The notes beneath the pieces were generated by a model. It had not been told where the DNA came from and made no database searches. It saw nothing but the letters and a program-made list of their open reading frames with translations. From contig NW_026781945.1 of the NCBI RefSeq assembly GCF_031769215.1, positions 2,666,001 to 2,730,000 of the forward strand: a stretch of DNA of 64,000 nt, given 5' to 3'. This document shows positions 18,921-55,053 of this stretch, piece after piece. A program made the position numbers and the translations under genes. The stretch is from Ylistrum balloti (lineage: Eukaryota). The first letter of the stretch is position 1; each line of letters starts with the position of its first letter.

Positions 18921-20039
18921 TCGAGCACTTTACATTGGAAATGCTTTTAGAATGACTAGGATAGTCCAGTCATTTTATGCCAAAATTAAGCTTAACCTCA
19001 AATGACTGGACCAATCCTCGACAAGATACACTAGCGTATAAGGTCATTATACAAGTCAATGATGAGAATTTCAGATTGCTATTTTGAAATAATCACTTAG
19101 ATCCGCGCGTGAAAAACTCCTACATCTGGTCTCTACAAAATTCCTATGTCTAGTCTATAAAATTTTCCTAGATTTTATTTTTAAATGTTTCTTTATCTGC
19201 TTCATAAAACAATCTTATACATGCTCCTTATTTATTTATTTATTTATTTGGCCCACGATTAAATGTTCCTGAATTTAGGGTTTAAATGTTATATATCTGC
19301 TCGTTTCTACATCGTTTATGTGATGTTTAAAATTGTTTTTATATCTACTTTATAAAATGTCCCTATGTCATGTCTTTGAAATATTCCCAAATCTCCTCCA
19401 AACAACGATCCTATGTTTTTGCCGTGCAAATTTCCTATTTATGCTCTTTGAAATGCTTTCACAACTGATCTACATATTGTATGCTAAACATAGTCTGTGA
19501 ATTAATCAAACGTCTGGACTATGAAATTTATATTTGACGTATAAATCGTTCCTTTGTCTAATTTTAAAAAAATAACATTTATGTTGTTCTTCTTTCAAAT
19601 GTCACTATATCCGTTATGTTTTATAAATCTTTCTTATATCCTGTATATAAAGCATGCCTATGTCTGATTAATGATATGTTCATATGTCTTGTCTATATAT
19701 TAACAGAGAGATGAATCAGATGATGCTTACCTTTCCGGACACAGGTAACCGTATAAATCTCTCTTTTTGTTCATAGACTGTCCCCGTTTCGTCAATTTTG
19801 ACATAGAATTACGATTTAGTCAATATATGGGTACTTTTTTTTTCATTTCCCTGATTGAAAATACGCTTATTCTCTTTATTTTATCCGAGCCGAAGATTTA
19901 TCAGCAGAATAATACATAAATATATATTGACAAAATGGAATGCATTGATTTTGATAAATAGGTAACACAATTTAGAGAGAAGAAAAGTAAAGAAAAATGT
20001 ACAATATTAACACAGATTACAGTATCATGCCGGCCTGTC

Positions 20040-21073
20040 ACAAAGACGTAAGCTACTCTCGCGCGCCATTGTTACTTTCAGCTGCTAATCACGGCCACAC
20101 TGACCCTTGAAATTCTGAAGCAGGAACTCATCACCACTTCTCCAATAAAATAATTGTTAAAGTCTTTAGAAACGATAAACACTTTATCAATTCAGAATAA
20201 ATGGCGCCTTTTCTTCTAAGGCAAACTGCGCGCGAAAAAGCGCACTAATAGAATTGCGCCTTTCCCTTTTTACCACCTTCTAGTAGTAACAGTCACTTTG
20301 CATTTCGTAACGACAGAGGGGTACGGCAAATTATACAAGATAATGTTTTTATTCGCTTTTCAGCACCCACCATAAAATATTCCGTTCCAGAGCCATTTGT
20401 TAAAAATATGTCTGTTAGATGACCGTGGGAACACTGGACATAGCCGTATATAAAAATGTAGTGAATTTAAAGTTATAACAGATGGACAGGGACACTGTGT
20501 TTCATAAAATGGAGACGATAATATTGACATACTATAAGAATTACTGCACCTCCCATTCAATCTGCTTACACTTTTTTTTACGAATCGTAAATTTTAACAA
20601 AGATCCTTATTAAAATACTGTTAACCAGGTCTATGATATCGATGAGATAAGATAGTAATTTTGTTAATTGGAGTGATCACTCGTTCACTACAGAAGATGG
20701 TAAACAGTTGGTTAATAAAGCAGTAAAAATTGATCCTCGGTAAACGTGGAAATTTCCAGTAATATCCGAGAAATCGACTATAAATAGGTACCTGACTAAA
20801 ATCCTGTTTATATATCAGATTTTTACTTAAAATGTTGTATAGTGAAGTAAGCAAATTATGTGAAAGCATTGTCGATGAGCGAGTTAGGCCAATTCTATAT
20901 TTGCTCAAGCAAAGTTCTGTAAACCTGCATTATGATCACGTGACGGCGTACGATCACTTCCTGTTTAGTACGAGCTCGATGTCAAGAAAATGGCAGAATG
21001 AATCAGACGAAGAGTGAAGAATTTTGACAGCGTTTAGGGTGTAGACGGGACGGAATCAAGTGTTGGGGACACG
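20040..21073 (+). promoter_or_regulatory. CpG-rich promoter and leader region of the PARP gene
   Basis: Local CpG enrichment. E2F-like GCGCGAAAA at 20230-20238, E-box TCACGTGA at ~20936-20943 and ETS-like CACTTCCTG at ~20955-20963. Function is inferred from motifs only. Confidence 0.45.
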
Positions 21074-24000
21074 ATGAATTCCTCACCCGATACACCAATT
21101 CTTATAAATTCTGACGGTAGGTTACTGAAAATGTTATGTTGGGCGGCAATTCATGGGCGAACTTGTTGTTGGCAGTGTGTTTATATGTCGAGGGTGTTTC
21201 AGGTTGTGTTGTCCCCTGAGTCAGCTGTCTTAGATATTAAGTCTTACTCTCCCATATACCTTTAGTTAGATACGTCACACCCTTAATCGTATCTATATCA
21301 TGAGAATAACTCAAAAGAAACCATCTTTATACAGTCAGAACCTCATTTTACCACGATAAAATTGAAAATGAAAGCAATCCGATTAATTAGATAGTCATTC
21401 ATCACCACGTTCTCAGAATTATCGACACGGTAAGTCTCTAGACCAAGGAAAGCCACCGTTTGATGTCTGAAAAGATTTTTTTCTGTACTTTTGAAAGTAA
21501 TAGAATGATTATACAATAACTTGTGACATTGTCACTAGTACTTATTGTATATCGTGTAATTAGCAGCTGTAATTAAGTCGAGGCTTCCAAGTAGACTGGA
21601 CTAGAAAAAAATCGTCATCATATAAAAATGTCTGTGACTTTATATAGCAGTAATATTGCAAGCCCTTACTTATTTAAAATGTGTTAATGTGTTAGAGCAT
21701 TGACTGAATCACTGAATGTCTATAAGTCATAATGGCAAACTGCCTCCGATAAACTCCAGTGATAGAGTACAGGTCATAGAAAAGTCTTCTGTGGTCCTTG
21801 GTTTGACACCTTATGTAGACATGACACTAGCTTTCCATTTGCTTTTGCTTCATTCCTTACATGTTTGACTTAACAGGTATCTAGATTATACTTTTCATTC
21901 TACAGGCTACCAATCTGATTATGCTTCATCATTTCACTACATCCTTTCAAATTTCGTTTTCAATGCACTTCAAGCTCCCCACCATTAAAAACTGAAAGGA
22001 AATAATAAACATACGTCAATACAATATATTTATAATTAATATATAACAGAATCACATTTCCTGTCCCCATTATCAATATTATGTGTATAACATCGCTCAT
22101 TCTTTCCATCATGAATATTCATTATTAAGAGCACTCTAATATCAGTATCACATTTTCTGATTTTCCTTGATATCAGCGCTACATTCTTGTCCCCCACCTC
22201 CATTAATATCAGTATGGAATATCTGTTTCTTAATTCATATTCCTTCATTTATATCAGTATCACACATTTCCTGATTTTCTGTTCTGCATTAGTAAGAGTT
22301 GAACCCCTGTTATATTCAATACCACATTTCTGCTACCCATCCTGCCTCCCCTCTCCCCGTCCTCACTTTAAACACATTAATATCAATGCTACCTGCTCCC
22401 CTCCCCCACATTAATATCTATATCACATGTATATACCCTATCCTATTGATATCATTATCTCATATCCTGTCCCTCATTCACACAATGATACGTGAAAAGC
22501 AAAGTCTGAAATGAGCATAGAATTTACTTACCTGTAGTATTTGGTATTGAACATTTATTATTACGAAAATATGTAATTGATTCTATGAAAACATGGTATA
22601 GTAAAATTTCAATTGTGGTATTCATTATTGTATTATATAATCAAGGGATAAAGAAACGCAGTGACATTATTTGCAATATCTTGTGAAAACGTTCATAAAC
22701 AATGAAAATCAGTCAAGCAACTCTCTAGGTTACAGTGCACTCAGTCCTGTATAAAATATTTCATTATTGTATTGCGTGACAATGTCCTAAAGTATGAAAT
22801 TGGAAAATCTTGTGCACAACAGTGTTGTGACATTGAGTTTTACTACTCGTCATACCATTAAGTAGTCTTCATAGAGACACATCATTTTCTGATATTTTGA
22901 TTAATTTCTGATAGTATAATATGGAAGTTCAGAGGGGTCAGGCCATTGCGATGATTATGCAAGGTCAAAGGCAAATACAGGTTGCCAGACATTTTGATGT
23001 CTACATTTGCGCTATAGAATGTCTTGCTAGACTTGTAAGGGAAACTGGACAGGTTGCTGACAGACCTAGATCTGGGCATCTGTATGTGACAACACAACAT
23101 CAGGACAGCTTTACTCATCTTGCGCATTTGCGAAATCGGCACCTTCCTGCCACTGAATCTGCCCTTCATACCATAGGTACTTTAAGCCGTCCCATCCATG
23201 CAAAAACTGTAAGGAAACGATGACAGGAAGTTCGTCTGAGGGCATGTCACTTGTTTGTAGGTCTGCCCCTTACCGCTGCTCATCACTGGCGTTGTATGGC
23301 TTGGGTGACAGCACATGCCCCCAGAATATTCCCATTGAGGCAGTGGAGGCGGGTCTTGTTCACTGATAAGTCCTGGTTCACCCTGTTTCGAACAGACGGT
23401 TGACATGTATACAGATTGTTCAGTTATAGTGTGGGGTATGTGTGGTAGCGGGTAATTTAACTGCCGCTAGGTATATAGATGAGATCCTCGGACCCCATAT
23501 TGTCCCATTGTTGCAGCAAAACAACCTCACATGCCAGCAGGCCCCATTTAGCGATGATCTGTCGCAACTTTCTCACAAACATCAATATCCACCTACTGGA
23601 CAGGCCACCATACAGCCCCCACCTATCCCCTATTATGCACTGGTTGTACCAGCTGGATAGACAGGTTTGACGATGCAAGCCTCCCTCTGTTACTCTGGCC
23701 CAATTGAAAATAGCCCTCTTGGAAGAATGGGTCAACATCCCAATGAGGAGGATAAACTTACTCATGAACTCCTTGCCTAAGAGAATCAGGGCTGTGGAAA
23801 GAGCGAATGAGAAACATACCTGGTATTGACTAGCCAACTACAGGGTTCTCTTTCAATTCCCTTCAATTACTCCTAATACCAGATACAAATTGTTGATTTT
23901 GCAGTTTGTTCTATATGAATTAATCTTCATTCTTACTTTAAGATATTGGACATTATACTTGACATCTTTCCTAGAATCATTTTCAAAGTTTATGCTGTGT

Positions 24001-27000
24001 TTCTATATCCCTGGAGTATGGTAGTATTTTGTATAGATACAATTCAGTTTGATTATTTATTTGGTTAGTGATTGACCTTCAACATTGACTTCAAATGATG
24101 AAGATGAACTTGTATTATAGGAATAGTTCTTATCATGGTTAAAGTTTATACTTTTGTCCCCTACCCCTCTGGAACTCTTAGCTCTAGTGGGTAGCTCGAT
24201 AGCCTTTTCTTATAAAATAAAGAAAACTCAAGCTGGGAACTCAGTCATGAATTCTCCGTAAAGTAACCCCCTCCCTCCCCACTCCCTCATTACGTTGAGC
24301 CGTAATTTTGAAAATTAACGTGTCCACAATTGTTTGTTTATACTTCATTCACTTTTTCTTACAGAAGATGAAGATGATAGTGATGTGGAATTCATTCACG
24401 AAGAAAAAAATGAAGACTTGGATGTGATATTTGTATCACAATCAACTACAACACTGGTCACTCCAAAATGTGATGAACAACATACAGGATGTGGTCATGT
24501 AGTACCATCTGTATCAAATCGCAGCATGAGCATATCCAGCTCGCTGGGTATGACTTTGACTATAGAGGATCGTGACCTCAACTCTCCCCTCGACCTGTCA
24601 TCTAAAAAAGGACCAAGTGATTTCAGTGACATCAGTGAGGCAAGTGATGATTCTGATGATGATGATGATAGCAGTGCGATTGATGACCTAGATGAGGATG
24701 GCGATGTGATACAAAGTCTGGTATCAGGAAGCAGTAAGGGTGTAGACAGGGGAGACTTGGGCTGTAGGCTGAGTGGAGGTGGTACTGGGGACAGTCTTAT
24801 GCAGCCCCTACAGGATAGCAGTCTCCCTAGCAATGGTGTCTCCTCCATGGATGTCATGGATAGCTCTGATGTTACCATGGCAGTGGTCAGTTCATCAGAT
24901 ACCAGCCTGCCTACAGCCAGGCAAGGATGTGTCTTATCTGTGCCCTCTCCACATGTAACAGACTTGGACATAAAACCACATATACCTCATTACAAATCTG
25001 AAAAACTGGAACCTTTTATACATGTGGGAGCTAAAACCAAGGATGGAATAATACCAAAGGTCGCTCCTGTGTTGGCACGGCCCAAGGATCTCCAGTCCAC
25101 ATCCAAAGGTGTTAGCAAGGACGAGGAAACATCTGGGGATATATGGGACACTCTTAAAAAGGACTTAGACTTTTTAAATGACACACCTTCATGTCCGTCA
25201 GCACAAAGTTCACTTTCCTACCCAGGAGGAAATGGACCAGGAACACTGAGTATCTCCAAGATACTGGACCCTACTCATCCACCCTCCAAGTGCATGAATA
25301 CATCCACACAATCATCTAACAATTTTTCCATCTCATCCATACTAAATTCCTCTGCCTCGACAGACTCCAGTCTCCGTTTGACTCAAGGTCACATAAAGGA
25401 CAAGGTCAATACCAGTCATTTACATGTTTCCACTACACCAAAGTCCGACACTTCACCATCGACTAGTATGTCAGTGGATGACCTTACCTACAGTAACACT
25501 ATAAATAAACAGTTACCCCCAAAGAAGCAGCAACGATGTATGAGGCAGTTCAGCTGTCCTTCACTTCGCAAAGGAGGGGCTACATCAGCTGTTACCTCAT
25601 CAAAGTCACAGAATTCATGCTTTGGCTGGGAAAAATGTTCTTACTGTCAGGTCTCTCTCATGGGTCTCAAATCGTCACGGTGCCTACAAGGTCACGTGAC
25701 CTGTGGCATGTGCCTGGAGGAAAAGGTCAAACTAGTGCTAACAGGAAAAACTAAGGTAAGGCATCTGTCAATATGTTATTTTAGTATGTACTGTATATCA
25801 TAACCATCACTGAAAAAAAATCCAGTTTAACAAGAAGGATATAGCTGGCAACAGTGGCCATGGGTTCCCTTTGATGTTGTAAACTGTGTGATTGATTAAT
25901 GGTTTTCAACACTATATAGATATATATATCTGATCTATTGCCTGCAGGTATGATTAGATTCTGGTCATGTTAAAACCTGGTCAACACTGTCGCTCATATA
26001 CATGGATGAGTGCTCACTTACTTACATAACTCACATGACACGTGTAGAGCAAATTGGCAAGCATTAGGGCAGAACCATTGGAAGGGAGGCAACTCTTACA
26101 GTGATATTTTCAGCAATTTGTGATGACTACAGCAAACACAGCTATAAAAATGTAGCTTTTATTGATTAGGTACAATACCTTTAAACTTAATTGATGAGGT
26201 GCAGTACCTGTAACCTTTATTGATGAGGTACATTACCTATAACCTTTTATGATGAGGTACAATACCTGTTACCTTTCTTTATTGATAAGGTACAATACCT
26301 GTAACCTTTATTGATGAGGTACAATACCTGTAACCTTTATTGATGAGGTACAATACCTGTAACCTTTATTGATGTGGTACAATACCTGTAACCTTTATTG
26401 ATGAGGTACAATACCTGTAACCTTTATTGATGTGGTACATTGTCTTCGACCTTTATTGATGAGGTACAATACCTGTAACCTCTATTAATGAGGTACAATA
26501 CCTGTAACCTTTATTGATGTGGTACAATACCTGTAACCTCTATTAATGAGGTACAATACCTGTAACCTTTATTGATGTGGTACAATACCTGTAACCTTTA
26601 TTGATGAGGTACAATACCTGTAACCTCTATTAATGAGGTACAATACCTGTAACCTTTATTGATGTGGTACAATACCTGTAACATTTATTGATGAGGTACA
26701 ATACCTGTAACCTTTATTGATGTGGTACATTGTCTTCGACCTTTATTGATGAGGTACAATACCTGTAAGCTTTATTGATGTGGTACAATACCTGTAACCT
26801 CTATTAATGAGGTACAATACCTGTAACCTTTATTGATGTGGTACAATACCTGTAAGCTTTATTGATGAGGTACAATACCTGTAACCTTTATTGATGTGGT
26901 ACAATACCTGTAACCTTTATTGATGAGGTACAATACCTGTAACCTTTATTGATGAGGTACAATACCTGTAACCTTTATTGATAAGGTACAATACCTGTAA

Positions 27001-30000
27001 CCTTTATTGATGAGGTACAATACCTGTAACCTTTATTGATGAGGTACAATACCTGTAACCTTTATTGATGTGGTGCAATACCTGTAACCTTTATTGTTGA
27101 GGTGCAATACCTGTAACCTTTATTGATGAGGTACAATACCTGTAACCTTTATTGATGTGGTACAATACCTGTAACCTTTATTGATGAGGTACACCTTTAT
27201 TACATTGTCTGTCGACCTTTATTGATGAGGTACAATACCTGTAACCTTTATTGTAACCTCTATTAATGAGGTACAATACCTGTAACCTTTATTGATGTGG
27301 TACAATACCTGTAACCTTTATTGATGAGGTACTATACCTGTAACCTTTATTGATAAGGTACAATACCTGTAACCTTTATTGATGAGGTACAATACCTGTA
27401 ACCTTTATTGATGTGGTACAATACCTGTAACCTTTATTGATGTTGTACAATACCTGTAACCTTTATTGATGTTGTACACATGTAATACCTTTAACTATTG
27501 ATGAGGTACAATACCTGTAACCTCTATTAATGAGGTACAATACCTGTAACCTTTATTGATGTTGTACAATACCTGTAACCTTTATTGATGTTGTACACAT
27601 GTAATACCTTTAACTATTGATAAGGTACAATACCTGTAACCTTTATTGATGTGGTACAATACCTGTAACCTTTATTGATGAGGTACATTGTCTTTGACCT
27701 TTATTGATGAGGTACAATACCTGTAAGCTTTATTGATGTGGTACAATACCTGTAACCTTTATTGATGAGGTACAATACCTGTAACCTTTATTGATGTGGT
27801 ACAATACCTGTAACCTTTATTGATGTGGTACAATACCTGTAACCTCTATTAATGAGGTACAATACCTGTAACCTCTATTAATAAGGTACAATACCTGTAA
27901 CCTTTATTGATAAGGTACAATACCTGTAACCTCTATTGATGAGGTACAATACCTGTAACCTTTATTGATGTGGTACAATACCTGTAACCTTTATTGATGA
28001 GGTACAATACCTGTAAGCTTTATTGATGAGGTACAATACCTGTAAGCTTTATTGATGAGGTACAATACCTGTAACATTTATTGATGTGGTACAATACCTG
28101 TAACATTTATTGATGAGGTACATTGTCTTCGACCTTTATTGATGAGGTACAATACCTGTAAGCTTTATTGATGAGGTACAATACCTGTAACATTTATTGA
28201 TGAGGTACATTGTCTTCGACCTTTATTGATGAGGTACAATACCTGTAAGCTTTATTGATGAGGTACAATACCTGTAAGCTTTATTGATGAGGTACATTGT
28301 CTTTGACCTTTATTGATGAGGTACAATACCTGTAACCTTTATTGATGAGGTACAATACCTGTAACCTTTATTGATGAGGTACATTGTCTTTGACCTTTAT
28401 TGATGAGGTACAATACCTGTAACCTTTATTGATGAGGTACAATACCTGTAACATTTATTGATGAGGTACAATACCTGTAACCTTTATTGATGAGGTACAT
28501 TGTCTTTGACCTTTACTGATAGGGAACAATAATATTTCTGTAACCTTTATTTGTAACATTCATATCTTTATATCACCAGCTGTTTGAATGTGGCACATGT
28601 TTATAATGTATTTGTAACTTTTTTTTCTTAAGTTCTGAAAATAAGTAAAATTGTGTTTGAGACATATGTCTTAGTCATATCACAAAATGTAAAACAGCCT
28701 TTTATCTATCACTTGTAATTCTTACCTTCTACTTAGTACATTTTTGCTAAATGTTTTGTGTCAATACTTTGTATTTCAGGAATCTCTACGTTGTGTACAG
28801 AGCGGTTGTGACAGTTACTACCCAATGAGTAAGTATCAGTTATCTGCTCCATCTCACGTGTCTCAAGGATGCAAGTTAGATTATACAATATGGTGCAGCA
28901 TTCAAAGTCAGGTCTAGCATCAGATAATGGTCTATTGTCCGTCTAGTCTGAGACAATTCTTGCTGTAGTTTTTGAGAAATACCCCATGGATCATCAGAGG
29001 TGTGCATTGTTCCATTTTGGGACTGATCAAAAGAACAAAGTGGCTAACAAGCTAATCAGAAAAAGAAGACAGTCAGCCGACGCCCACATTGGTTTTTGAT
29101 AGTCATAATTTGTGATCATCTTTCCTTGAAAAGTACTGGATGGATCTTTGCCAAAATTCATATGTAGGTTTCCTTAGTGTCTTATTGTACCCTGTTGATT
29201 TTGGGACTGATCAGAAAAACCAAATAGCTGAAAAGTAGAAAAGAAATTGTACACAGCAGGCATGATATTGTTTATCTCTTTTGTATCACTTGTTTCTATA
29301 AGTTATGATAGTTAATAAGATATAAGGTAATATGACAGTGTCTTCATGTAAAGTCACATAACAGTGTTTGTGTAAAGACACATGACAGTAGTATACATGT
29401 GCTATATAAAATTTCTAACAAAAATAAAGACAAGAAAAGATGATGAATACATTTAACAATTTAATGACAATACACTCATGTCTGAAGGAGGATTTCCTAC
29501 AACTTGCTTTAGTAAACAGTCTATTTTTGTAAAAGGAAATGTTTAAGATCACCAAGTTTTAGTAAACTTGCTGTACTGATGCTCATTAATTTAGACAATG
29601 GCCTTTTGTTTTGCTTTAATACTGTGGTGTCTCTGTACTTCCTCCTGTAATTTTCAGGTTATTGATACTTTCCTGTACGTTCCTTCCTCTATATACTCGT
29701 CCTACATTCTGCCATAACTTTGCGTTTTGTAGATGTTTCAGATGTTAGGCTAACACACCCTTCCTGACGTACAAAAGTCATACATGTATATATACTAGTA
29801 TGAAAGCCATCTGACTATTCATCACATATAAAGTAGGCATTTACAATCCTGATTTTAATCCTAGTGAACTTGCATGTGTATGACAAGTGTATAGCTGGTA
29901 GTTTTGATTACCAGTTTTTACAGAAATGCGTTATCCTGGGCTTAGTCACATCTTCAGTCTTATCTGTAGTAAACGTGTTTCCATTGCATACATTTTTTCA

Positions 30001-33000
30001 GGTTGTTTGTGAATATTGTAAATTAGTGCTAAATGTAATATAACTGTGATTGTGAATACAATACTGGTCAGGTTCTGTCAGCTGTCTGCCTCACTCAATA
30101 GTAGGGAAGTGACCTTTCACCTGAGGCAAGTTAATCAGATCACTGTTGAAATCCTGTGGGATGTAAAATTCTCACTCAGAGCTGGTGTAGTGTTCGTTCA
30201 TGTTCAAAGGTCATACTGTATTTTAAAAGTTCTTTTTCCTGCCTTTGTTAACATTTTAATACATGCATGCTCATATCTGTTGAGAGTCTGAATGTAATTA
30301 CTCTTTGTAGTTTAAAATTGTAATATTACACCACATCTACAGGATTCTAAAAATTCATGTTATTCGCAGTGACCTTGACCTTGATTTTAATATGATATAT
30401 GTAACTGAGTCCTTAGTTACATTAGTCATAGACATACATAGTTGAGAACTTTCATCACAAGTATTTGTAAAAGTGAAAGTTTTCATCTACTTCAATTATG
30501 ATGACTACTAACACTTAAAATTTAAGTACTAGAAGTGGAGTGATGGGTGGGAAGGTCATAAGTATAGGTTGACTGAAGCACTGTAAGTACTAAGTGGTTG
30601 CATCGAAGAGTTCTTTAAGGGGTCCATCCACTACTAATGATGTATTCTTACTAGTGAGTGACATAAACTTTAGCAACACCGTTCTCTGAAATTCTGAACT
30701 TTTAGATTATAATAATTTTGTAAATCTGCTGATATTTATCTACATAGAGTGGCTTCTATATTGAAATAGCAATGGGTATATTGTCAAGATTATGGGTTAG
30801 TTACATGCTGGGGTGAAGAGTTTTCAAGTTTGTTCAAATAAATGACTTTGGCTCTCTTTCAATGTCACATAATTGAAATATTTGAATTTTTTAAATGTTT
30901 TGTGAATAAACAAGAAATCACAGGTTTTAGATGTGTATTTTTAAATCACCTGACCATAGGTCATGGTTACCAATAGCAATCATTGTTCATCCATGGTCAT
31001 GCATTGACTTTTTCTCGTGAACATGATAACAATAATAAATATGAAAAATAATACCTCAGATGAGCTTAACTATGAAATTGATTCGATTGTAACTTACAGA
31101 GTTGTAGCCCTCTGCAGTTTTATTACTATTGAACCTTGTGAACATAATTTGAGTAAATAAAAAGAGATTTTGATGAAATTTTGTATGCAGCTTTATGTAA
31201 AAAACGAAATAGTATGTCTGGTTAATACTAGTCAGCTGATTGTTTAAGTCAATTGGCCTCTTGTGTAACATTTAAGGAGGGACAGGTGTTACATTTAGGG
31301 TAAAAATGAAAATGACACAAATAAAACCATTTTATTATAAGCTGCAGATCCAGGACCTTTTGGCCTTTTACATTGTTTGATCCATTCAGATGGTGTAATA
31401 TACCCATTATTATTATTTACAGGTGAGCTGAAACAGTCACTTCCAAACATAGTGGTGGAGATACTGGAGGACAAACTTGACAATGACTACATTGATTACA
31501 TTGCCAATATGATCCTGAAGAATGCAGGGGCCTCTTCTCCTCCTTCCTCTAATCCAGCTCCTTCCACTTCATCATCTACGTCATCCCTTTCCTCCTCAGC
31601 TTCTTGCTCCAGTTCATCTGTTCCCTCAACTTCAGCTGCCCCCATGGTGATGATGGATGACTCTATGGGTGCCTCGACCAGCCAGCCATTGAGAACACCT
31701 GATGTCAAAGACACCAATGAAACTGTAAGACCAGAGTTATCAACCGAGAAAAAAGAACCTATGATGGAGGACTGTCCACCCAACTGGACACCAATGGACA
31801 AACGCTCGGTATGCCAATGAAGTTTAAGAAACCATTTCAGACAAAAAGAATCATATCAAGTGATTCAGTCAAAACTCGTTATCTCAAATTGATTGTAAAT
31901 TTCAAAAACCTTCTCAATACCCAGATCAGATAGAACACTCTTAATGGATTGAAGTGTCTTATATGTTTTACCAAATTTTGTCCCCCTATGGTCTCAAATT
32001 TCCCCTTGAGGAAGGAATCAGATTTACTGTAGTTTATAGTGTATGTTACAGTTTTGAGCATAACTTGTTTATGTTCAATTGAAATTAGTTCAAACTTGGT
32101 TTGAATTGTCACTATAGGATAAGAGTTTGATAATATGCACATGTTGAACCTGACTGACCCCTTATGGATGATTGGTGGGGTCAAATTGACTGAATTTCAA
32201 AAACCCTCTCACTATCCAGATAAAGTAGAACCTTAAACTCTTCATTGATAAAAGTGTCTTAAAAGTACTTTACTAAAATTTTAAGTTTCATGAGCCAAGG
32301 GTCTCTCATTTCCCCATTGGAAGGGGGTAAATTCTGCTATAGTTAATATAGGAAAATAACATTTTAGGCATAATCTATTTATTTTCTATAGGAAATAGTT
32401 TAAACTTGGTTAGAATTGTCATTGTCTCTTAATAAGTCCACCCCTAGACTTTTAAACAGAAGTAATGTGTTGGTTCCCTTGTTTATTGCAGAACAAATAA
32501 GGCATTTGTGTCAATATGTATGTTTGAAAAAGTCTTGATTTATGTTCTTGTTGATTGTCCTTTGTCCTAATTCCTGGTACATTGTTTTACACAGAGCTAT
32601 TTTATGGTCCCCCTTGAACCGGAGTCACAGGAATATGTTGATGTTGCCCTGAAGTTCCACAATTCAATGAAGTTCCCAGCAGCTGATATCACCAAAATCT
32701 TCAGAGTTCAGAATCCGATTCTCTGGAAATACTACACAGTGTAAGACAGCAATAAAGATGAAAAAAATGTTGACAACAAGAAATGTATCTACCTAGGAGT
32801 TATCATATTTAAAGTATTTCCTTATTATGTAATCATCTGACTTCGAGGGTCGGGATGACTTATAGTCATTGTGTATATGCTTACTGAGGCCTTCGAGTTT
32901 CAGACTCGTAATTCTTAGGTTTTTGATTACTTACAATCTTTGCAGAGAAAGTAGAATATGATCACAACCCCTGAAACTTTGAGACTGTGTGAGTACAAAA

Positions 33001-34839
33001 ATGTCTGTAAACTTCTATATGCCTCTGTAGCACACCAGACTTGTTACTACACATATCAAATCTGTATTCTGATCAGGTCTCTAGTTAGTCACTTGTAATT
33101 ACTAGGATAGAAGATCTTATAACACAACTAGTAGAGATTTAGTTAAGACATTTTGAACAACTACATGGTCACCTTCATTAGACAAAAATGTCCAATGTGA
33201 AGAGTACTAGCACTGATGTATGTAATGTACGAGATGGTAAGGAATTGACCCATTGATACACTACATACATCAGTTTGCTTCACAATCTTTTACAAGTTGT
33301 GTTCTAAGAACTTCTATTCTATTAACCAACCTGGAGAAATTGTGCCAAAACACTTGTAACTGCAATATATGTTTGTTTAACAGGAAGAGAACAGAGATGA
33401 TTATCGAGAATGATGGGTTGGACGTCCAGGAGAACAGTCTGTTTCATGGCACTACAAGTTCTGTTTTGGATGCCATCTGTAAAAAAGGATTTGACTGGAG
33501 AGTATGTGGAAAAAATGCAACAGTTTATGGCCAAGGTAAGGGAGGCAGTATAGAGATATACGCTTATACCTTGATACAGTTAATGGAGGCTTTGAATCAA
33601 AACTGAGACAGCTGTATTAATGAGGATGAAAGTAAACAATAACTCAAACTAAAACTATGGATACTGTAAAACATTACATTTTATACTCACTTGTCTGGAA
33701 CTTGTTTGAACGGTACAAAACTTGTTTGGAACTTTGTTGAACGGTACAAACTTTGAACAGTGGATATTATATAAAACAAAAAAATAGTCTATTATGGAAA
33801 ATGATATGTATGTATTTTTGTGGTTTCAGGTCAAATGAGAAAACTACAAATGTTGATGTATTAAATTATATTTTATGTTAGGGAATAGATCACTATTTTG
33901 ATAACTGTTTCAGGCCTCGAGACTTTTGATAATAAAAAAAGAATGATATTATTATATAAAATGATAAAAAATGAATGATATTATTATATAAAATGATAAA
34001 AAATGAATGATATAATTATATGAAATGTATCTTTTCTGTCGTCAGGTTCATACTTTGCTGTGAATGCCTCCTACTCTCACATGTATACAGATAATGGCAA
34101 TGAAAATCGTCGTCGTGGACGTGTTGTTACCTTGTTGTCTGGGATGCCTCGCCCAATGCCGGCCCATGTGCCATTCTTGTCGACACCCCCCTCCTCAAAT
34201 GTTCTTTCAACACAGATTGGGTTTAGTCCAGCTGCGATACAGGTGTACCATCCACCAAATCCTATTTCCTCCATTTCTACTGGAGCCAGTAATGTCCCTC
34301 TCTCCAATGTTGCCACACCCACTAATTCTTCCAGCTCCTCTCACATGGTAGCTCAGGGTCTAGTGGCGCCTCCTCCAGTGGACAAAGGATCCAACAATTC
34401 CAGTCAGGTACCGCAGCAACAAGCAGCTGCATCATCTGGCCAGCAGGCTCCTGGACCAATCAGAAACCGACACATCACTCACCAGCTCACCTCCATAAGG
34501 AGACAACTTAATGTGCTGCGTTCCAGTGTACAGCAACTGAGAAATACATCAATACCCACCCAGATTGGTCAGCCTGCACTGGGCAATCCAGCAGACATTC
34601 AGGCATCAAATAAAACTGTACATAGAATGTTTCTGGCTAAGGTGCTAGTGGGGAAATATACTGGTGGTCACAGTGGGCTGAGAAAACCTCCGCCATTATA
34701 CCCATGTACAGATCCCTATGGCAAGTGCTACGACTCTTGTGTTGACAACATACACAACCCAAAAATATTTGTCATATTTGACACAGCCCAAGCCTACCCA
34801 TCTTACGTGCTGGAATATCATTGTGAAGATGGTCAGTGA
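21074..34839 (+). CDS. Mono-ADP-ribosyltransferase (PARP7/TIPARP-PARP11-PARP12-like catalytic domain) with an RBR-type RING1 and a long disordered N-terminus, ~986 aa, 7 coding exons
   Basis: Exons: 21074-21116, 24365-25755, 28780-28828, 31423-31808, 32595-32740, 33384-33535, 34046-34839. Phases match and the total is 2961 nt. Motifs: PPNW, IFRVQNPILW, LFHGT, GFDWRVCGKNATVYGQGSYFA, MFLAKVLVGKY, YDSCVDN..NPKIFVIFD..QAYPSYVLEY. The triad is H-Y-I. Confidence 0.88.
22040..22480. repeat. Degenerate C-rich tandem-like repeat
   Basis: Recurring ATATCAGTATCAC(A)CATTT-CTG and CCCCC-CATTAATATC blocks. Confidence 0.4.
22636..24018 (+). mobile_element. Decayed Tc1/mariner DNA transposon (~1.4 kb) in intron 1 of the PARP gene
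   Basis: ORF 22921-23223 encodes the Tc1 HTH region (VARHF...ETGQVADRPRSG...HLRNR). Broken frames downstream give WRRVLFTDKSWF, GNLTAARYIDEIL and PPYSPHLSPIMH. Diverged TIRs: left AGGGATAAAGAAACGCAG (~22644) and right, reverse-complemented, AGGGATATAGAAACACAG (~23995-24012). Confidence 0.88.
26170..28530. repeat. 29-bp satellite, ~80 copies
   Basis: Unit GATGAGGTACAATACCTGTAACCTTTATT, with interspersed CATTGTCTTCGACC variant units. Lies in intron 2 of the PARP gene. Confidence 0.97.
31860..32410. repeat. Degenerate two-to-three block repeat or interspersed element fragment
   Basis: TTTCAAAAACC-TCTCA-TA-CCAGAT...GTCTCA-ATTTCCCC-TTG...AAACTTGGTT-GAATTGTCA occurs twice (~31900 and ~32195). Confidence 0.45.
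33930..34025. repeat. 32-bp AT-rich tandem repeat, ~3 copies
   Basis: ATGATAAAAAATGAATGATATTATTATATAAA at 33961 and 33993, just upstream of the last PARP acceptor. Confidence 0.85.
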
Positions 34840-35254
34840 GAATCGTGGTAGTGTACCGGAGAGAGTGTAGTTAGTGTCAGATTCACATCTGTAGTGCTTT
34901 AAGGTTGTCCGCCATGTTGATACCATTACCATGGAAATATATACAAACAGGATGAAGACATATGACTGTTTAGGTTAAGAGAAGTAGTATTAAATGAGTT
35001 CTTATATCTTTGTAGTGGCTGTGATTGTATATCAAGCATTAATTTAGTCAAATTCACTTGTTATATTGAGAACAACCATGGACACATTTGCTACCTCTCG
35101 TTTGCTTGTTAAAAGTCTTAAGACACCAGTGCTGACTGTCATGTCACTAAATTAATCAGTTTAACAGTCATTCCTTACTTGTCACTGACTCGTATTTATA
35201 GTATCGATTGTATACATATGTATAGCATATGAGAGAGTTTGGCTAGTGTAACTG

Positions 35255-35545
35255 ATCGAACATCAAGTATCGACTGACGTGTCATTGAAGTATACAGGCT
35301 AGGTTAACTGATAGTACATCGAGTATTGACTGACATGTCACTGAAGTATACAGGCTAGGTTAACTGATAGTACATCAAGTATGGACTGACATGTCACTGA
35401 AGTATACAGGCTAGGTTAACTGATAGTACATCAAGTATGGACTGACATGTCACTGAAGTATACAGGCTAGGTTAACTGATAGTACATCAAGTATTGACTG
35501 ACATGTCACTGTAGTTTTCAGGCAGGGTTAACAGATTGTACATCA
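35255..35545. repeat. 56-bp tandem repeat, ~5 copies
   Basis: Unit GTATACAGGCTAGGTTAACTGATAGTACATCAAGTATGGACTGACATGTCACTGAA, period 56 (35346 to 35402). Confidence 0.93.
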
Positions 35546-37300: not shown

Positions 37301-38984
37301 GAGGAAGACGCCACCAACAACAACTTGTCAGTAGAAAAGTAATGCTGAATATTATGTTTATTAATGAGTTATATGATGTGAGCCAAAGTCTTCTTGACTG
37401 TAAGTATAGTTGTTGATGACAGGATATTCCAACATGCAAGTTTTTGGTGTCATTATGTATATAGAGAGAAACTAGTAGTTTTGCTGTAAACATAGAAATG
37501 TGCCAACAGTTTGATTTTTTTAAAAATAGCAGAATATGGATAATGAGAAGAAATGATTTCACATAAAATCACAGAATCCAAAGTCTGAATCATGTGACAA
37601 ATATCGGAATGAATTTTGTCGAAGTATTGTATTAATTTCAGTTTAAATACTGTAGATATAGATATATAGTATTTCAGATGTTTTCATTGTTATGTTTGAA
37701 CCTCATAAGAGGCTATTTTTATGTGATGGTTGTTGTTTTATGGAATCTCTTATAATCTATATATATACATTCTGATACTAGGTACATCTGGCTGTTGAAA
37801 GTTATGTTAGCTTACTGTACATTTGACTTTCTTTAATGGCTACTACTTTTTTCTATTTCAGCAATACAATAAGTTTGCAGAAATTTAATTTCATGAATGC
37901 TGAATAACCATTGTAAAATTAACTTCTGTAATTTTGGATTCAACTTGAAAGAATGTTTACTGTACTGATTGTTACATGTGAAATGTTGCTAAAATTTGGT
38001 CTACTTGGGCACGCCAAGATGTATTGAATTAAAAAAACTTCTGAGAATGAGAGTCTGATGAGTATGTGTGGATGTATTGAATCAAGAGGTCTGTCGAAAA
38101 ATTCCAAGTAAGAAGGAGAAAAATGCATTAAAGAGCAAGAGGAGGTAAGAGAGTTACAACAGAAAGACTGCATATGGCAAGCTTTTTTTTATAAAGTTCT
38201 TTATAATCTGTGATCAGGTGTAATTTAAACTGGTCCATTTAGATAAAGTTTTTTTTTCACAATTCAAAAGGAAATCCAAGAAATCTGAGTGGCTGAAATT
38301 GAGCTAAACATTATTTGTATTTCTAAAGTTCCCCTGGAATGGTAAACCAAATTTCTCAAAATTTTGTGTATCAGTTTGCATCTAGTTCCTTGATCCATTT
38401 ATGGTTTTTGACTTAAGAAAAATAAATCTTCTTATCTTTTCAAAACAAAGTAGAAATGACTGTTGTTTGGTCAGAGTGTTCTTATTGTAATGGTTTCAAT
38501 CAGTTAGAAATCCAAGATGGCTGCAATGATATATTTGTTAAATCATTTTCAACTACTTGAGAGTGTATGACAAATACTGACTGATACAGGCCCAAAAAAG
38601 CCTTTTGTTTTTGAATAGATTTAGAAATTATTAAGTAGAGCTTTCAATGGACATAATCAATTTTGTTGCAAATAGTTTAAAAAATGGTTTGAAAGTCTGT
38701 GAGATATTGGTTGTTTACATGATGTCACGTTTGCAAGAATTATGATTATGTAAACGTTTGTGTCCAATATTTATACAGAGGAGAGAGAGGCTAGATAGAA
38801 CCTCGGATATGACTGGGAGGCTGTCATGAGGTGTACAATCATATTATTTGTATTACAGAATAAATGTAAAACATGTCAATCTTCTGTCTTCTTTTTTATG
38901 TCATGTACAACCCTTACTTTCGTGATATTTTGGATCCATTATGAAGCATCCATATTTGTTTTCTCAATGAATTTAGTATAATTG

Positions 38985-41315
38985 GTTGGTCACCTAAATT
39001 CTCCACCTAGATGTTCACTGATGAGAGGGCATGTTTACCTATATTCACCTCCCAGATGTTTACTGATGAGAAGGCTTGTTAACCTATACTTACCACCCAG
39101 ATGTTTACTGATGAGAAGGCTTGTTAACCTATATTCACCTCCCAGATGTTTACTGATGATAAGGCATGTTAACCTATATTCTCCATCCAGATGTTTACTG
39201 ATGAGAAAGCTTGTTAACCTATATTCTCCATCCAGATGTTTACTGATGAGAAAGCTTGTTTACCTATATTCACCACCCAGATGTTTACTGATGAGAGGGT
39301 TTGTTAACCTATACTTACTCCCCAGATGTGTACTGATAAGGCTTAACCTATATTCTCCATCCAGATGTTTACTGATGAGAAGGCTTGTTAACCTATATTC
39401 ACCACCCAGATGTTTACTAATGAGAAGGTATGTTTACCTGTACTCTCCACTTAGATGTTCATTAATGAGAGGGCATGTTTACCTGTACTCTCCACCTAGA
39501 TGTTCACTGATGAGAAGGCATGTTTACCTGTACTCTCCACCTAGATGTTCACTGATGAGAGGGCATGTTTACCTGTACTCTCCACCTAGATGTTCACTGA
39601 TGAGAGGGCATGTTTACCTGTACTCTCCACCTAGATGTTCACTGATGAGAGGGCATGTTTACCTGTACTCTCCACCCAGATGTTTACTGATGAGAAGGCA
39701 TGTTTACCTGTACTCTCCACCTAGATGTTCACTGATGAGAGGGCATGTTTACCTGTACTCTCCACCTAGATGTTCACTGATGAGAGGGCATGTTTACCTG
39801 TACTCTCCACCTAGATGTTCACTGATGAGAGGGCATGTTTACCTGTACTCTCCACCTAGATGTTTACTGATGAGAAGGCATGTTTACCTGTACTCTCCAC
39901 CTAGATGTTCACTGATGAGAAGGCATGTTTACCTGTACTCTCCACCTAGATGTACACTGATGAGAAGGCATGTTTACCTGTACTCTCCACCTAGATGTTC
40001 ACTGATGAGAGGACATGTTTACCTGTACTCTCCACCTAGATGTTCACTGATGAGAGGGCATGTTTACCTGTACTCTCCACCAGTATGTTCACTAATGAGG
40101 CTTGTTAACCTATATTCTCCACCCAGATGTTTACTGATGAGAAGTCTTGTTAACCTATTTTCTCCACCCAGATGTTTACTGATGAGAAGTCTTGTTAACC
40201 TATATTCTCCACCCAGATGTTTACTGATGAGAAGTCTTGTTAACCTATATTCTCCACCCAGATGTATACTGATGAGAAGTCTTGTTAACCTATATTCACC
40301 ACCCAGATGTTTACTGATGAGAAGGCTTGTTAACCTATATTCTCCACCCAGATGTTTACTGATGAGAAGTCTTGTTAACCTATATTCATCACCCAGATGT
40401 TAACTGATGAGAAGTCTTGTTAACCTATATTCACCACCCAGATGTTTACTGATGAGAAGTCTTGTTAACCTATATTCTCCACCCAGATGTTTACTGATGA
40501 GAAGGCTTGTTAACCTATATTCTCCACCCAGATGTTTACTGATGAGAAGTCTTGTTAACCTATATTCTCCACACAGATGTTTACTGCTGAGAAGTCTTGT
40601 TAACCTATATTCTCCAACCAGATGTTTACTGATGAGAAGGCTTGTTAACCTATATTCTCCACCCAGATGTTTACTGATGAGAAGTCTTGTTAACCTATAT
40701 TCTCCACCCAGATGTTTACTGATGAGAAGGCTTGTTAACCTATATTCTCCACCCAGATGTTTACTGATGAGAAGCCTTGTTAACCTATATTCTCCACCCA
40801 GATGTTTACTGATGAGAAGGCTTGTTAACCTATATTCTCCACCCAGATGTTTACTGATGAGAAGTCTTGTTAACCTATATTCTCCACCCAGATGTTTACT
40901 GATGAGAAGGCTTGTTAACCTATATTCTCCACCCAGATGTTCACTGATGAGAAGTCTTGTTAACCTATATTCTCCACCCAGATGTTTACTGATGAGAAGT
41001 CTTGTTAACCTATATTCTCCACCCAGATGTTTACTGATGAGAAGTCTTGTTAACCTATATTCACCACCCAGATGTTTACTGATGAGAAGGCTTGTTAACC
41101 TATATTCTCCACCCAGATGTTTACTGATGAGAAGTCTTGTTAACCTATATTCTCCACCCAGATGTTTACTGATGAGAAGTCTTGTTAACCTATATTCACC
41201 ACCCAGATGTTAACTGATGAGAAGTCTTGTTAACCTATATTCACCACCCAGATGTTAACTGATGAGAAGTCTTGTTAACCTATATTCTCCACCCAGATGT
41301 TTACTGATGAGAAGG
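38985..41315. repeat. 45-bp satellite, ~52 copies, two sub-types
   Basis: Units CTTGTTAACCTATATTCTCCACCCAGATGTTTACTGATGAGAAG(G/T) and CATGTTTACCTGTACTCTCCACCTAGATGTTCACTGATGAGAGGG. They explain the 473-aa and 268-aa ORFs with a 15-aa period. Confidence 0.97.

Positions 41316-44931: not shown

Positions 44932-55053
<10,122 letters not shown>

What the first reader, a model, noticed from the sequence alone, without database searches (positions are those of the whole stretch)
25636..34839. Chimeric enzyme: an RBR-type RING1 fused to a mono-ART domain in place of IBR-RING2
Seen: spliced exons give CSYC-x11-CLQGHVTCGMCLEEKVKLVLTGKTKESLRCVQSGCDSYYPMSELKQSLPNIVVEILE, then a Ser/Pro linker, then a complete H-Y-I PARP domain. 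No IBR or RING2 appears in these exons, and I see none in the intervening introns. Established: the C-x3-H-x2-C-x2-C...C-x4-C spacing plus the PxSELxxxLP helix is typical of RBR RING1 (from memory, closest to RNF216/TRIAD3). RBR RING1 binds E2~ubiquitin, while catalysis needs the RING2 cysteine. PARP7/11/12 normally carry CCCH/WWE domains instead. Inference: a domain swap may couple E2~Ub recruitment to mono-ADP-ribosylation, in the manner of the PARP9-DTX3L crosstalk but within one polypeptide.
Basis: partly seen in the sequence, partly recalled or inferred. Interest (0 to 1): 0.75.

Follow-up and report, generated by a model that had tools for sequence, protein, structure and literature searches.

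The report
RNF216-type RING1 fused to PARP
This scallop gene, conserved across molluscs, joins SUMO-binding motifs and the E2-docking zinc finger of the ubiquitin ligase RNF216 (without that ligase's catalytic half) to an active-looking PARP7-like mono-ADP-ribosyltransferase, an undescribed way of wiring the ubiquitin/SUMO and ADP-ribose systems into one protein.

Summary
A 7-exon, 986-aa gene (21074-34839, + strand, all introns GT-AG) encodes three N-terminal SUMO-interaction-type motifs, a PLDLS motif, a C3HC4 zinc finger with a following helix, a disordered linker and an H-Y-I PARP domain. Spliced mRNA contigs from the bay scallop align to the window in exactly these seven blocks, so the RING and PARP exons sit on one transcript and no IBR/RING2 exon exists.

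The zinc finger is an RNF216-type RBR RING1:
- A family profile hits only RNF216 in the PDB (E 3e-8) and in a 5.8-billion-protein search (E 8e-5).
- hhalign gives 96% probability.
- AlphaFold plus Foldseek puts RNF216 first and RNF144A RING1 second.
- A phase-0 intron sits at the same aligned position in fish RNF216.

The architecture occurs in bivalves, gastropods and a chiton, in two paralogue groups, always with a 138-388-aa disordered insert in the PARP domain. No paper I could search describes it.

The canonical E2-contact positions are polar and variable, so E2 docking is doubtful. My best reading is a SUMO-directed nuclear mono-ADP-ribosyltransferase whose RING1-helix is a non-catalytic docking module. 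It is a new variant of a known kind, of moderate interest.

The parts
21074..21116 (+). Exon 1: start codon and first SIM-like core (PILINSD...), phase-1 donor. The 5' UTR extends back to about 20973.
   Evidence: The Argopecten mRNA contig aligns to 20973-21114.
24365..25755 (+). Exon 2: acidic tail of SIM1, SIM2 (24382-24405), SIM3 (24415-24438), PLDLS (24586-24600), long disordered Ser-rich region, LPPKKQQR (25513-25536), and RING1 ligands 1-6 (25636-25713).
   Evidence: dN/dS is 0.008 for the SIMs and 0.07 for the disordered part.
25636..25755 (+). RING1 first part: C-x2-C-x11-C-x3-H-x2-C-x2-C plus the central helix CLEEKVKLVLTGKTK, ending at a phase-0 intron shared with fish RNF216.
28780..28828 (+). 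Exon 3: RING1 ligands 7-8 (C-x4-C, 28792-28809) and YYPM(S).
31423..31529 (+). Exon 4, first part: helix equivalent to the RBR RING1-IBR helix (SELKQSLPNIVVEILEDKLDNDYIDYIANMILK).
   Evidence: AF2 predicts helices at 64-70 and 73-100 of the domain, pLDDT about 88-90. It aligns to the RNF216 helix.
31530..31772 (+). Exon 4, middle: Ser/Pro-rich disordered linker.
   Evidence: pLDDT below 50 with no secondary structure. dN/dS is 0.20.
31773..31808 (+). Exon 4, end: CPPNWTPMDKRS, the N-terminal edge of the PARP7/12-type catalytic region.
   Evidence: P313 and W316 are invariant in A2.
32595..32740 (+). Exon 5: PARP domain N-terminal helices (…RVQNPILWKYYT), ending at an intron also seen at about this position in fish TIPARP and an oyster WWE-PARP.
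33384..33535 (+). Exon 6: PARP domain with the H of H-Y-I (LFHGT, 33439-33453).
   Evidence: Pfam PF00644 scores 27.1 bits on this exon alone. H/G/T are invariant in the family.
34046..34839 (+). Exon 7: GSYFA (the Y), ASYSHMY, disordered insert (34087-34617), MFLAKVLVG…PKIFVIFD (the I, 34756-34782), stop codon.
34087..34617 (+). Low-complexity insert of about 177 aa in the loop after the second nicotinamide-stacking Tyr helix. It falls between PARP12 construct residues 124 and 125.
   Evidence: One search shows two matched stretches contiguous in PARP12. The insert is 138-388 aa in all 12 RING-PARPs sampled and absent from TIPARP, PARP12 and mollusc WWE-PARPs. pLDDT is below 50. It is retained in Argopecten mRNA.

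Best explanation
One gene encodes a member of a mollusc-wide, so far unnamed protein family. Its layout is: an N-terminal cluster of three SUMO-interaction-type motifs, a PLDLS motif, a long disordered region, an RNF216-derived RING1 with its RING1-IBR-type helix (no IBR, no RING2 catalytic cysteine domain), a disordered linker, and a PARP7/TIPARP-side H-Y-I mono-ADP-ribosyltransferase domain with a long disordered loop insert.

Shown: the single transcript, the domain identities, strong purifying selection on the SIMs, the RING1-helix and the ART domain, and descent of the RING1 from the RNF216 lineage.

Inferred: the protein is an active mono-ART, probably nuclear, brought to SUMOylated partners (and possibly CtBP) by its N-terminal motifs. 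The RING1-helix cannot carry out RBR chemistry because there is no RING2 cysteine. It also lacks a basic linchpin for direct E2~Ub discharge, so it acts as a non-catalytic docking or regulatory module. Whether its partner is still an E2~ubiquitin is open; I put that at about one in three.
For: - **Gene model and transcript.** Seven GT-AG exons give 986 aa. Argopecten spliced mRNA contigs from four runs match the seven blocks in the window and in their own genome.
- **RING1 identity.**
  - Profile against the PDB: RNF216 7M4M/8EB0 at E 3e-8, next RBR ARIH2 at 0.08.
  - RING-only profile against 5.8 billion proteins: the only hit outside the family is RNF216, E 8e-5.
  - hhalign: 95.9%, 68 ungapped columns.
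  - ESM-Atlas structure neighbours: 7 of 10 carry PF26191 RING-HC_RBR_RNF216.
  - AF2 model (pLDDT 80.8) with Foldseek: top hit 8EB0 RNF216, second 1WIM, a RING finger domain I take to be RNF144A's RING1.
  - Same-column phase-0 intron in fish RNF216.
- **No other domain.** Pfam finds only PF00644 in nine orthologues. AF2 shows linker and insert disordered. No Cys-rich frame lies in the introns.
- **ART competence.** The nearest solved structure is PARP12, E 2e-40. H-G-T, Y-F-A and Y-x-H-x-Y are invariant and the I is at least 90% conserved. dN/dS is 0.006-0.013 for the ART halves and the RING1-helix, and 0.008 for the SIMs.
- **SIMs.** They are conserved from chiton to scallop. RNF216 also carries N-terminal SIMs (PMC9834252 Fig. 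1 legend; fish RNF216 motifs).
- **No linchpin.** The residue after the last Cys is D/N/S/E in 16 of 19 members. RBR RING1s hold E2~Ub open and need RING2 (PMC9834252).
Against: - There is no biochemical or expression evidence from this species; no RNA run was found.
- SIMs, PLDLS and the basic LPPKKQxR patch are short linear motifs. They can arise by convergence, and their function is inferred only from conservation.
- The canonical E2-contact positions are polar and variable, which argues against the E2-docking part. RNF216 itself has Cys at the first of these positions and tolerates Ala there, so this is not decisive.
- The TIPARP-side placement of the ART domain rests on one unrooted tree with moderate support (92/79).
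- dS between the two scallops is saturated (about 1.1), so the dN/dS values are rough.
Confidence: 0.6

Rival explanations
1. One reading: the RING1 still docks an E2~ubiquitin (UbcH7/UbcH5 type), and the adjacent ART domain acts on or with it. It could ADP-ribosylate ubiquitin or the E2, or the docked E2 could place ubiquitin on the ADP-ribose that the ART domain has written. A ubiquitin/ADP-ribose mark would then be written by one SUMO-targeted polypeptide.
For: The RING1 fold and all eight ligands are conserved and closest to an RBR RING1 that binds UbcH7 canonically (PMC9834252). The RING1-helix is under purifying selection as strong as the catalytic domain. PARP-E3 partnerships exist (DTX3L-PARP9, from my own knowledge), as do PARP fusions with U-box or UBCc domains (PMC2964712).
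Against: The positions that contact the E2 in canonical RING and RING1 complexes are polar and unconserved. Across 19 members the residue before Cys2 is Q/N/T/S/K…, the residue after Cys2 is K/Q/G…, and the helix +4 position is Q/R/K. RNF216's hydrophobic helix face (I, Y) is replaced by E and Q/R/K. Even the full RNF216 RBR shows no detectable E2~Ub binding without allosteric di-Ub, which needs the IBR. No complex could be modelled with these tools.
Confidence: 0.2
2. A SUMO-targeted ubiquitin ligase (STUbL) with an added ART domain. The SIM cluster plus RING works like RNF4 or RNF111, with the RING1 having become an autonomous E3 that discharges E2~Ub directly onto SUMOylated substrates.
For: The layout, an N-terminal SIM cluster followed by a RING, is that of known STUbLs (my own knowledge). 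The SIMs are conserved.
Against: A basic linchpin after the last Cys is present in only 1 of 19 members. The hydrophobic E2-contact residues are missing. The nearest relatives are RBR RING1s, which hold E2~Ub open and prevent direct discharge. RNF4 appears only as an insignificant hit (E 0.11-2.1).
Confidence: 0.1
3. The RING1-helix is purely an intramolecular regulator or oligomerisation element of the ART domain, or a binder of a non-E2 partner such as ubiquitin, SUMO, Ubc9 or a substrate. On this view it has no remaining link to ubiquitin transfer.
For: The most conserved surfaces are the acidic central helix (CLEExVK, K invariant) and the post-RING helix (MVVEILEDKL), not the E2-contact loops. 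In RBRs that helix is a ubiquitin/UBL-binding surface.
Against: Nothing speaks directly against it; it overlaps with the best explanation. It does not explain why the full eight-ligand RING1 geometry is kept for such a role.
Confidence: 0.35
4. Annotation artefact: two neighbouring genes, a RING gene and a PARP gene, wrongly merged.
For: None beyond the absence of RNA-seq from this species.
Against: Exon 4 alone encodes both the RING1-type helix and the start of the PARP region in one open frame. Intron-less 3.8-kb contigs from four Argopecten runs, and further 3.0-3.7-kb contigs of unnamed source, carry the whole ORF. The architecture recurs in more than 25 species.
Confidence: 0.02

Closest known systems
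RNF216 / TRIAD3 (RBR E3 ligase; PDB 7M4M, 8EB0; Pfam PF26191 RING-HC_RBR_RNF216)
   Same: It is the best and only significant sequence match of the zinc finger. Ligand spacing is identical, including C-x3-H and C-x4-C, with 18 residues between ligands 6 and 7. The SEL..LP helix start matches, a phase-0 intron sits in the same column, and it is the top structural match. RNF216 also has N-terminal SIM-type motifs.
   Different: No IBR, no RING2/Rcat catalytic cysteine, and no UBA_RNF216 or RNF216_N domain were found. The E2-facing residues have diverged to polar ones. The C-terminal half is a PARP domain.
TIPARP/PARP7 and PARP12 (CCCH-WWE mono-ARTs, H-Y-I)
   Same: The catalytic domain is closest to PARP12 among solved structures (E 2e-40). 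By profile score and tree it is closest to vertebrate TIPARP among non-mollusc proteins. It has the H-Y-I triad and the PxxW lead-in, and shares an intron near ...LW.KY..|K...
   Different: No CCCH finger and no WWE domain. A 138-388-aa disordered insert follows the ASYSHxY helix. The SIMs and RING1 take the place of the RNA- and ADP-ribose-reading modules.
DTX3L-PARP9 (and Deltex RING-DTC) ubiquitin/ADP-ribose crosstalk
   Same: It brings a RING-type module and a PARP-fold protein together.
   Different: There the two are separate polypeptides, the RING is a canonical Deltex RING with a DTC domain, and PARP9 is a poor enzyme (my own knowledge). Here there is a single chain, an RBR-type RING1, no DTC, and an intact H-Y-I ART domain.
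Other PARP fusions with ubiquitin-system domains: Dictyostelium U-box-Macro-PARP (DDB0232928) and fungal clade 6A PARP-UBCc (Citarelli et al. 2010, PMC2964712)
   Same: They are precedents for a PARP catalytic domain sharing one polypeptide with an E2-binding or E2-like domain.
   Different: The partner domains differ (U-box, UBCc), as do the PARP clades and the taxa. None has an RBR-derived RING1 or SIMs.
SUMO-targeted ubiquitin ligases (RNF4, RNF111)
   Same: A cluster of hydrophobic-core, acidic-flank SIMs lies at the N-terminus, followed by a RING-type finger.
   Different: The RING here is of RBR RING1 type without a linchpin. RNF4 is only an insignificant sequence hit. An ART domain is attached.

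Membership tests
RBR E3 ubiquitin ligases (RNF216 subfamily) | RING1 with the RNF216-type ligand pattern and fold | tested here: met
   Profile E 3e-8 to 7M4M/8EB0. hhalign 95.9% to fish RNF216. Foldseek top hit 8EB0, TMq 0.65, rmsd 2.2. Atlas neighbours carry PF26191. However, the Pfam copy used here gave no significant hit.
RBR E3 ubiquitin ligases (RNF216 subfamily) | IBR domain after the RING1-IBR helix | tested here: not met
   A disordered Ser/Pro linker follows the helix. No IBR hit in nine orthologues. No Cys-rich frame in the introns or downstream. The mRNA has no extra exon.
RBR E3 ubiquitin ligases (RNF216 subfamily) | RING2/Rcat with the catalytic cysteine | tested here: not met
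   Same evidence as for the IBR.
PARP / ARTD family, mono-ART class | PARP catalytic domain (PF00644) above the curated cut-off | tested here: met
   The orthologue with 89% identity scores 80.7 bits against a cut-off of 26.7. The window's exon 6 alone scores 27.1 bits.
PARP / ARTD family, mono-ART class | H-Y-[I/L/V] triad instead of H-Y-E, with intact NAD+-site residues | tested here: met
   Alignment to PARP12 2PQF. H393, G394, T395, Y425, F426, A427, Y432, H434 and Y436 are invariant and I661 is at least 90% conserved.
PARP / ARTD family, mono-ART class | Measured ADP-ribosyltransferase activity | not testable with these tools
   Needs recombinant protein and an NAD+ assay.
TIPARP/PARP7 orthologue group | CCCH zinc finger and WWE domain N-terminal to the catalytic domain | tested here: not met
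   Pfam finds only PF00644 in nine orthologues, whereas the TIPARP hits carry PF02825/PF23466.
TIPARP/PARP7 orthologue group | Catalytic domain groups with TIPARP rather than PARP12/ZAP | tested here: inconclusive
   The unrooted ML tree puts RING-PARPs with TIPARP plus amphioxus at 92/79 support. Profile scores are about 250 bits for TIPARP and about 230 for PARP12.
SUMO-targeted ubiquitin ligases | Several SIMs (hydrophobic core with acidic or Ser flank) | tested here: met
   Three motifs within residues 8-39 are conserved from chiton to scallop. dN/dS is 0.008. Actual SUMO binding is not testable here.
SUMO-targeted ubiquitin ligases | RING able to activate E2~Ub for direct discharge (hydrophobic E2 contacts, basic linchpin) | tested here: not met
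   The E2-contact positions are polar and variable, and the linchpin position is D/N/S/E in 16 of 19 members. This is sequence-level evidence only.

The most novel reading that the evidence does not exclude
A single polypeptide that is recruited by polySUMO, docks an E2~ubiquitin on an orphaned RBR RING1, and uses its own ART domain to write a combined ubiquitin/ADP-ribose mark. It might ADP-ribosylate ubiquitin or the E2, or the docked E2 might ubiquitylate the ADP-ribose it has just written. That would be a natural one-chain SUMO-to-ADPr-to-Ub relay, and a case where an RBR RING1 has been re-used without RING2.
Probability: 0.12. Interest if true: 0.85.

Novelty: new variant of a known kind. 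Interest (0 to 1): 0.55.

Why it matters
Crosstalk between ubiquitin and ADP-ribose (Deltex/PARP9, ubiquitylation of mono-ADP-ribose) is an active field, and so far it is known mostly as cooperation between separate proteins. Here evolution has kept the E2-docking half of an RBR ligase, SUMO-binding motifs and an intact mono-ART in one chain across the deepest splits sampled within molluscs (chiton, gastropods, bivalves). All three elements are under strong constraint.

This gives a natural test of two questions. First, what can an RBR RING1 do without RING2? Second, can SUMO, ubiquitin and ADP-ribose signalling be hard-wired together?

It also shows that molluscs hold a PARP7-side enzyme whose targeting modules (CCCH, WWE) are replaced wholesale. 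Automatic names such as 'PARP7S', 'serine-rich adhesin' and 'zinc finger CCCH-type antiviral' hide this. If the RING1 turns out to be only a structural remnant, the finding is a tidy case of exon-level domain shuffling and of modest interest.

Tried and rejected
- **Pfam.** Scans of the single exons and of 19 RING fragments found no significant family for the zinc finger. The best hits were Sina_RING and zf-RING_14 at E 1e-3 to 1e-2, below cut-off. The RNF216 link therefore had to come from PDB profile, hhalign and structure searches.
- **Exon-2 half of the RING alone against the PDB.** Only noise came back (RNF4 at E 0.11).
- **RNA-seq for this species.** Two run searches returned one run of unknown kind. 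Laid on 28700-34699, its contigs are collinear with the genome through the introns (about 1% SNPs), with no joints at the exon borders, so it is DNA and says nothing about splicing.
- **Hidden IBR/RING2 exons.** A scan for Cys-rich open frames over 19-47 kb gave only the known exons and a few frames whose Cys/His spacing shows no IBR or RING2 pattern by eye.
- **A real intron hidden in the exon-7 low-complexity stretch.** Rejected: the stretch is retained in Argopecten mRNA and present in all orthologues.
- **Merged-gene artefact.** Rejected (see rivals).
- **Members outside Mollusca.** None appeared among the best 150 of 1.84 billion representatives, or among the 8000 candidates scored in the profile search. 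Several transcript-only clusters have no taxon name, so the range is a lower bound. No named cephalopod appeared.
- **A mollusc RNF216.** I could not retrieve one. The timing of the fusion relative to mollusc RNF216 is untested.
- **PARP-side introns.** One position is shared with both fish TIPARP and an oyster WWE-PARP, so it does not discriminate between them.
- **Literature.** Five full-text searches found no description of this architecture. 'PARP7S' appears in the searched papers only as a bare label on a mussel protein entry; from my own knowledge it is an automatic orthology label.

Full report
**Observation**

The + strand between 21074 and 34839 carries a seven-exon gene: 21074-21116, 24365-25755, 28780-28828, 31423-31808, 32595-32740, 33384-33535 and 34046-34839.

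The eight ligands follow C-x2-C-x11-C-x3-H-x2-C-x2-C-x18-C-x4-C and are split between exons 2 and 3. Exon 4 opens with the SELKQSLP helix. It continues in the same frame through a Ser/Pro linker to CPPNW, the lead-in of the PARP domain. One exon therefore already ties the RING-type module to the PARP module.

**One transcript, and no hidden IBR or RING2**

No RNA run could be found for this species. The single run that holds the stretch is collinear with the genome, introns included, so it is DNA.

The bay scallop Argopecten irradians supplies the missing evidence. Its 995-aa orthologue is encoded by a 12.6-kb spliced gene. It is also encoded by four independent 3.8-kb contigs, from different runs, each with an uninterrupted ORF. 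One of these contigs aligns to its own genome in seven blocks at 98-100% identity, and to the window in seven blocks that coincide with my exons. No extra exon is present, and the low-complexity stretch in exon 7 is retained.

A scan of 19-47 kb for Cys-rich open frames found nothing IBR- or RING2-like. The next gene downstream is an isocitrate dehydrogenase on the minus strand.

**The zinc finger is an RNF216-type RING1**

Pfam did not recognise it. Four other lines of evidence agree.

- **PDB profile.** A profile of 19 family members (A1) finds RNF216 (7M4M, 8EB0) at E 3e-8, covering RING1 and the start of the following helix. The next RBR, ARIH2 RING1, is at E 0.08.
- **Large database.** A RING-only profile, given a long first row so that long proteins were eligible (A3), found only family members and one outsider among the 8,000 word-sharing candidates scored out of 5.8 billion proteins. 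That outsider is a fish RNF216, at E 8e-5.
- **hhalign.** Against that fish protein it gives 95.9% probability over 68 ungapped columns.
- **Structure.** Seven of the ten nearest ESM-Atlas neighbours carry PF26191 RING-HC_RBR_RNF216. An AlphaFold2 model of the domain (pLDDT 80.8) has RNF216 8EB0 as its top Foldseek hit (probability 1.0, TMq 0.65, rmsd 2.2 Å). The second hit is 1WIM, a RING finger domain that I take to be the RING1 of RNF144A, another RBR.

There is also a shared intron. The scallop phase-0 intron at TGKTK|ESLRC lies in exactly the column of a phase-0 intron at FGSGK|SELSC in the fish RNF216 gene. That points to descent rather than convergence. The second scallop intron in the RING is not shared.

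**The PARP half**

The nearest solved structure is PARP12, at E 2e-40. It matches in two stretches that are contiguous in PARP12, so the scallop protein carries an insert of about 177 aa right after the ASYSHxY helix. From my own knowledge, this is the loop where tankyrases carry their zinc-binding motif.

The H-Y-I triad and the surrounding NAD+-site residues are invariant or nearly so across the family. AlphaFold2 of residues 300-983 of the closest orthologue shows only three folded parts: RING1-helix and the two halves of the ART domain. The linker and the insert have pLDDT below 50, and no WWE- or CCCH-like fold is hidden there.

**The family**

- **Range.** The same architecture (880-1510 aa) occurs in scallops, mussels, oysters, pearl oysters, unionids, clams, the protobranch Solemya, abalone, limpets, a vent snail, periwinkles, pulmonates and a chiton. 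A second, more divergent paralogue group appears in Pinctada and Solemya.
- **Naming.** All are labelled uncharacterized or carry automatic names. I take 'PARP7S' to be an automatic orthology label; in the searched papers it appears only as a bare name on a mussel protein entry.
- **Insert.** It is 138-388 aa long in every member sampled. It is absent from TIPARP, PARP12, ZAP-like and mollusc WWE-PARPs.
- **Nearest outsiders.** Outside the family, the best profile scores go to vertebrate TIPARP, then PARP12. An unrooted ML tree of catalytic domains puts the RING-PARPs together (85/83). It places them next to TIPARP plus an amphioxus protein (92/79), apart from PARP12/ZAP and the mollusc WWE-PARPs. 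This placement is tentative.
- **Limits.** No member from outside Mollusca and no named cephalopod turned up. Some transcript-only clusters have no taxon.

**Other conserved elements**

The first 40 residues hold three SIM-type motifs: a hydrophobic core with acidic or Ser flanks. In the window they read PILINSD-acidic, DVEFIHEE and DLDVIFVS, and they are conserved from chiton to scallop. A PLDLS motif, noted by a sibling finding, and an LPPKKQxR patch are conserved in most bivalves and several gastropods.

RNF216 is also drawn with N-terminal SIMs (PMC9834252, Fig. 1 legend). The fish RNF216 has three comparable motifs in its first 70 residues. This fits the idea that the whole 5' half derives from an RNF216-like gene, but short motifs converge easily.

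Between this scallop and Argopecten, dN/dS values are as follows. dS is saturated, so they are rough.

| Region | dN/dS |
|---|---|
| SIMs | 0.008 |
| RING1-helix | 0.013 |
| ART halves | 0.006-0.010 |
| Disordered N-terminal parts | 0.06-0.07 |
| Insert | 0.08 |
| Linker | 0.20 |

**Mechanism**

Three things follow from established RBR biology together with the sequence.

- Without RING2 there is no ubiquitin thioester, so RBR catalysis is impossible.
- RBR RING1 domains hold E2~Ub in the open state (PMC9834252). The linchpin position after the last Cys is D/N/S/E in 16 of 19 members, so direct RING-type discharge is unlikely.
- The ART domain looks competent.

What is uncertain is whether the RING1 still binds an E2. 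The canonical contact positions are polar and unconserved in the family: the residue before Cys2 (Cys517 in RNF216), the residue after Cys2 (Tyr519), and helix position +4. RNF216's hydrophobic helix face is replaced by E and Q/R/K. The invariant features are instead the acidic helix CLEExVK and the post-RING helix MVVEILEDKL.

I therefore favour a SUMO-directed, probably nuclear mono-ART whose RING1-helix is a non-catalytic docking or regulatory module.

**Comparison with known systems, and novelty**

PARP domains fused to ubiquitin-system domains are known: U-box-Macro-PARP in Dictyostelium and PARP-UBCc in fungi (PMC2964712). PARP-E3 partnerships such as DTX3L-PARP9 are well studied.

I found no description of an orphan RBR RING1 fused to a PARP7-side ART domain together with SIMs, in five full-text searches. 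The proteins are in public databases only as uncharacterized entries. The protein fails membership of the RBR family (no IBR or RING2) and of the TIPARP orthologue group as defined by CCCH-WWE. It is a bona fide PARP-family mono-ART by sequence. I class it as a new variant of a known kind, with interest 0.55.

Noticed in passing
window 26151-28531: A 29-bp satellite of about 82 copies (86% matches) fills most of the intron between the two RING1 exons (exons 2 and 3).
   Followed up: no
window 38992-41315: A 45-bp satellite of about 52 copies (93% matches) lies downstream of the gene. It reads through as long spurious ORFs (38982-41213).
   Followed up: no
window 16094-16491 and 35241-35545: Two further tandem arrays: a 48-bp unit with 8.3 copies upstream, and a 56-bp unit with 5.4 copies about 400 bp beyond the stop codon. 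The Argopecten mRNA stops aligning to the window at about 34950, so whether the second array lies in the 3' UTR is unknown.
   Followed up: no
window 22921-23670 (+) and 17665-18921 (-): Transposon remnants. By eye, Tc1/mariner-like transposase ORF fragments lie inside intron 1 of the gene, and reverse-transcriptase-like ORF fragments lie upstream on the minus strand.
   Followed up: no
window 47024-47332 (-): An exon of an NADP-isocitrate dehydrogenase gene on the minus strand (motif ...AAHGTVTRH...). This is the next gene downstream and the subject of sibling finding s1-232027.
   Followed up: no
window 24586-24600: The PLDLS (CtBP-binding type) motif noted by sibling finding s1-232098 is conserved in most bivalve and several gastropod orthologues, but not in the chiton, Patella or the pulmonates.
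   Followed up: partly
P0213 (Pinctada, 974 aa) and P0212 (Solemya, 1419 aa): A second, divergent paralogue group also has the RNF216-type RING1 and a PARP domain with the loop insert. The family therefore duplicated early in bivalves or before.
   Followed up: partly
L007 8761/9140 (fish RNF216 gene) against window 25755/28780: A phase-0 intron sits at the same aligned column in RING1 of vertebrate RNF216 and the scallop RING-PARP. The next RNF216 intron falls at the helix/IBR boundary (ADELVR|CPFC), near where similarity to the mollusc protein ends.
   Followed up: yes
L008 (Astyanax TIPARP) and L009 (Saccostrea WWE-PARP) against window 32740/33384: An intron at about the same place (…LW.KY..|K…) occurs in fish TIPARP, an oyster WWE-PARP and the scallop gene. 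It is probably ancestral to the PARP7/11/12 group. The phases were not checked.
   Followed up: partly
window 28700-34699, run X1: An independent DNA data set of the same species is collinear with the window at about 1% divergence. It shows small intronic indels and high-copy depth spikes at 29100-29299 and 33100-33499 (repeats in introns). The two exonic differences (31775 T>C, 32639 T>C) are third-codon positions. The first is synonymous (Cys); the second was not checked.
   Followed up: partly
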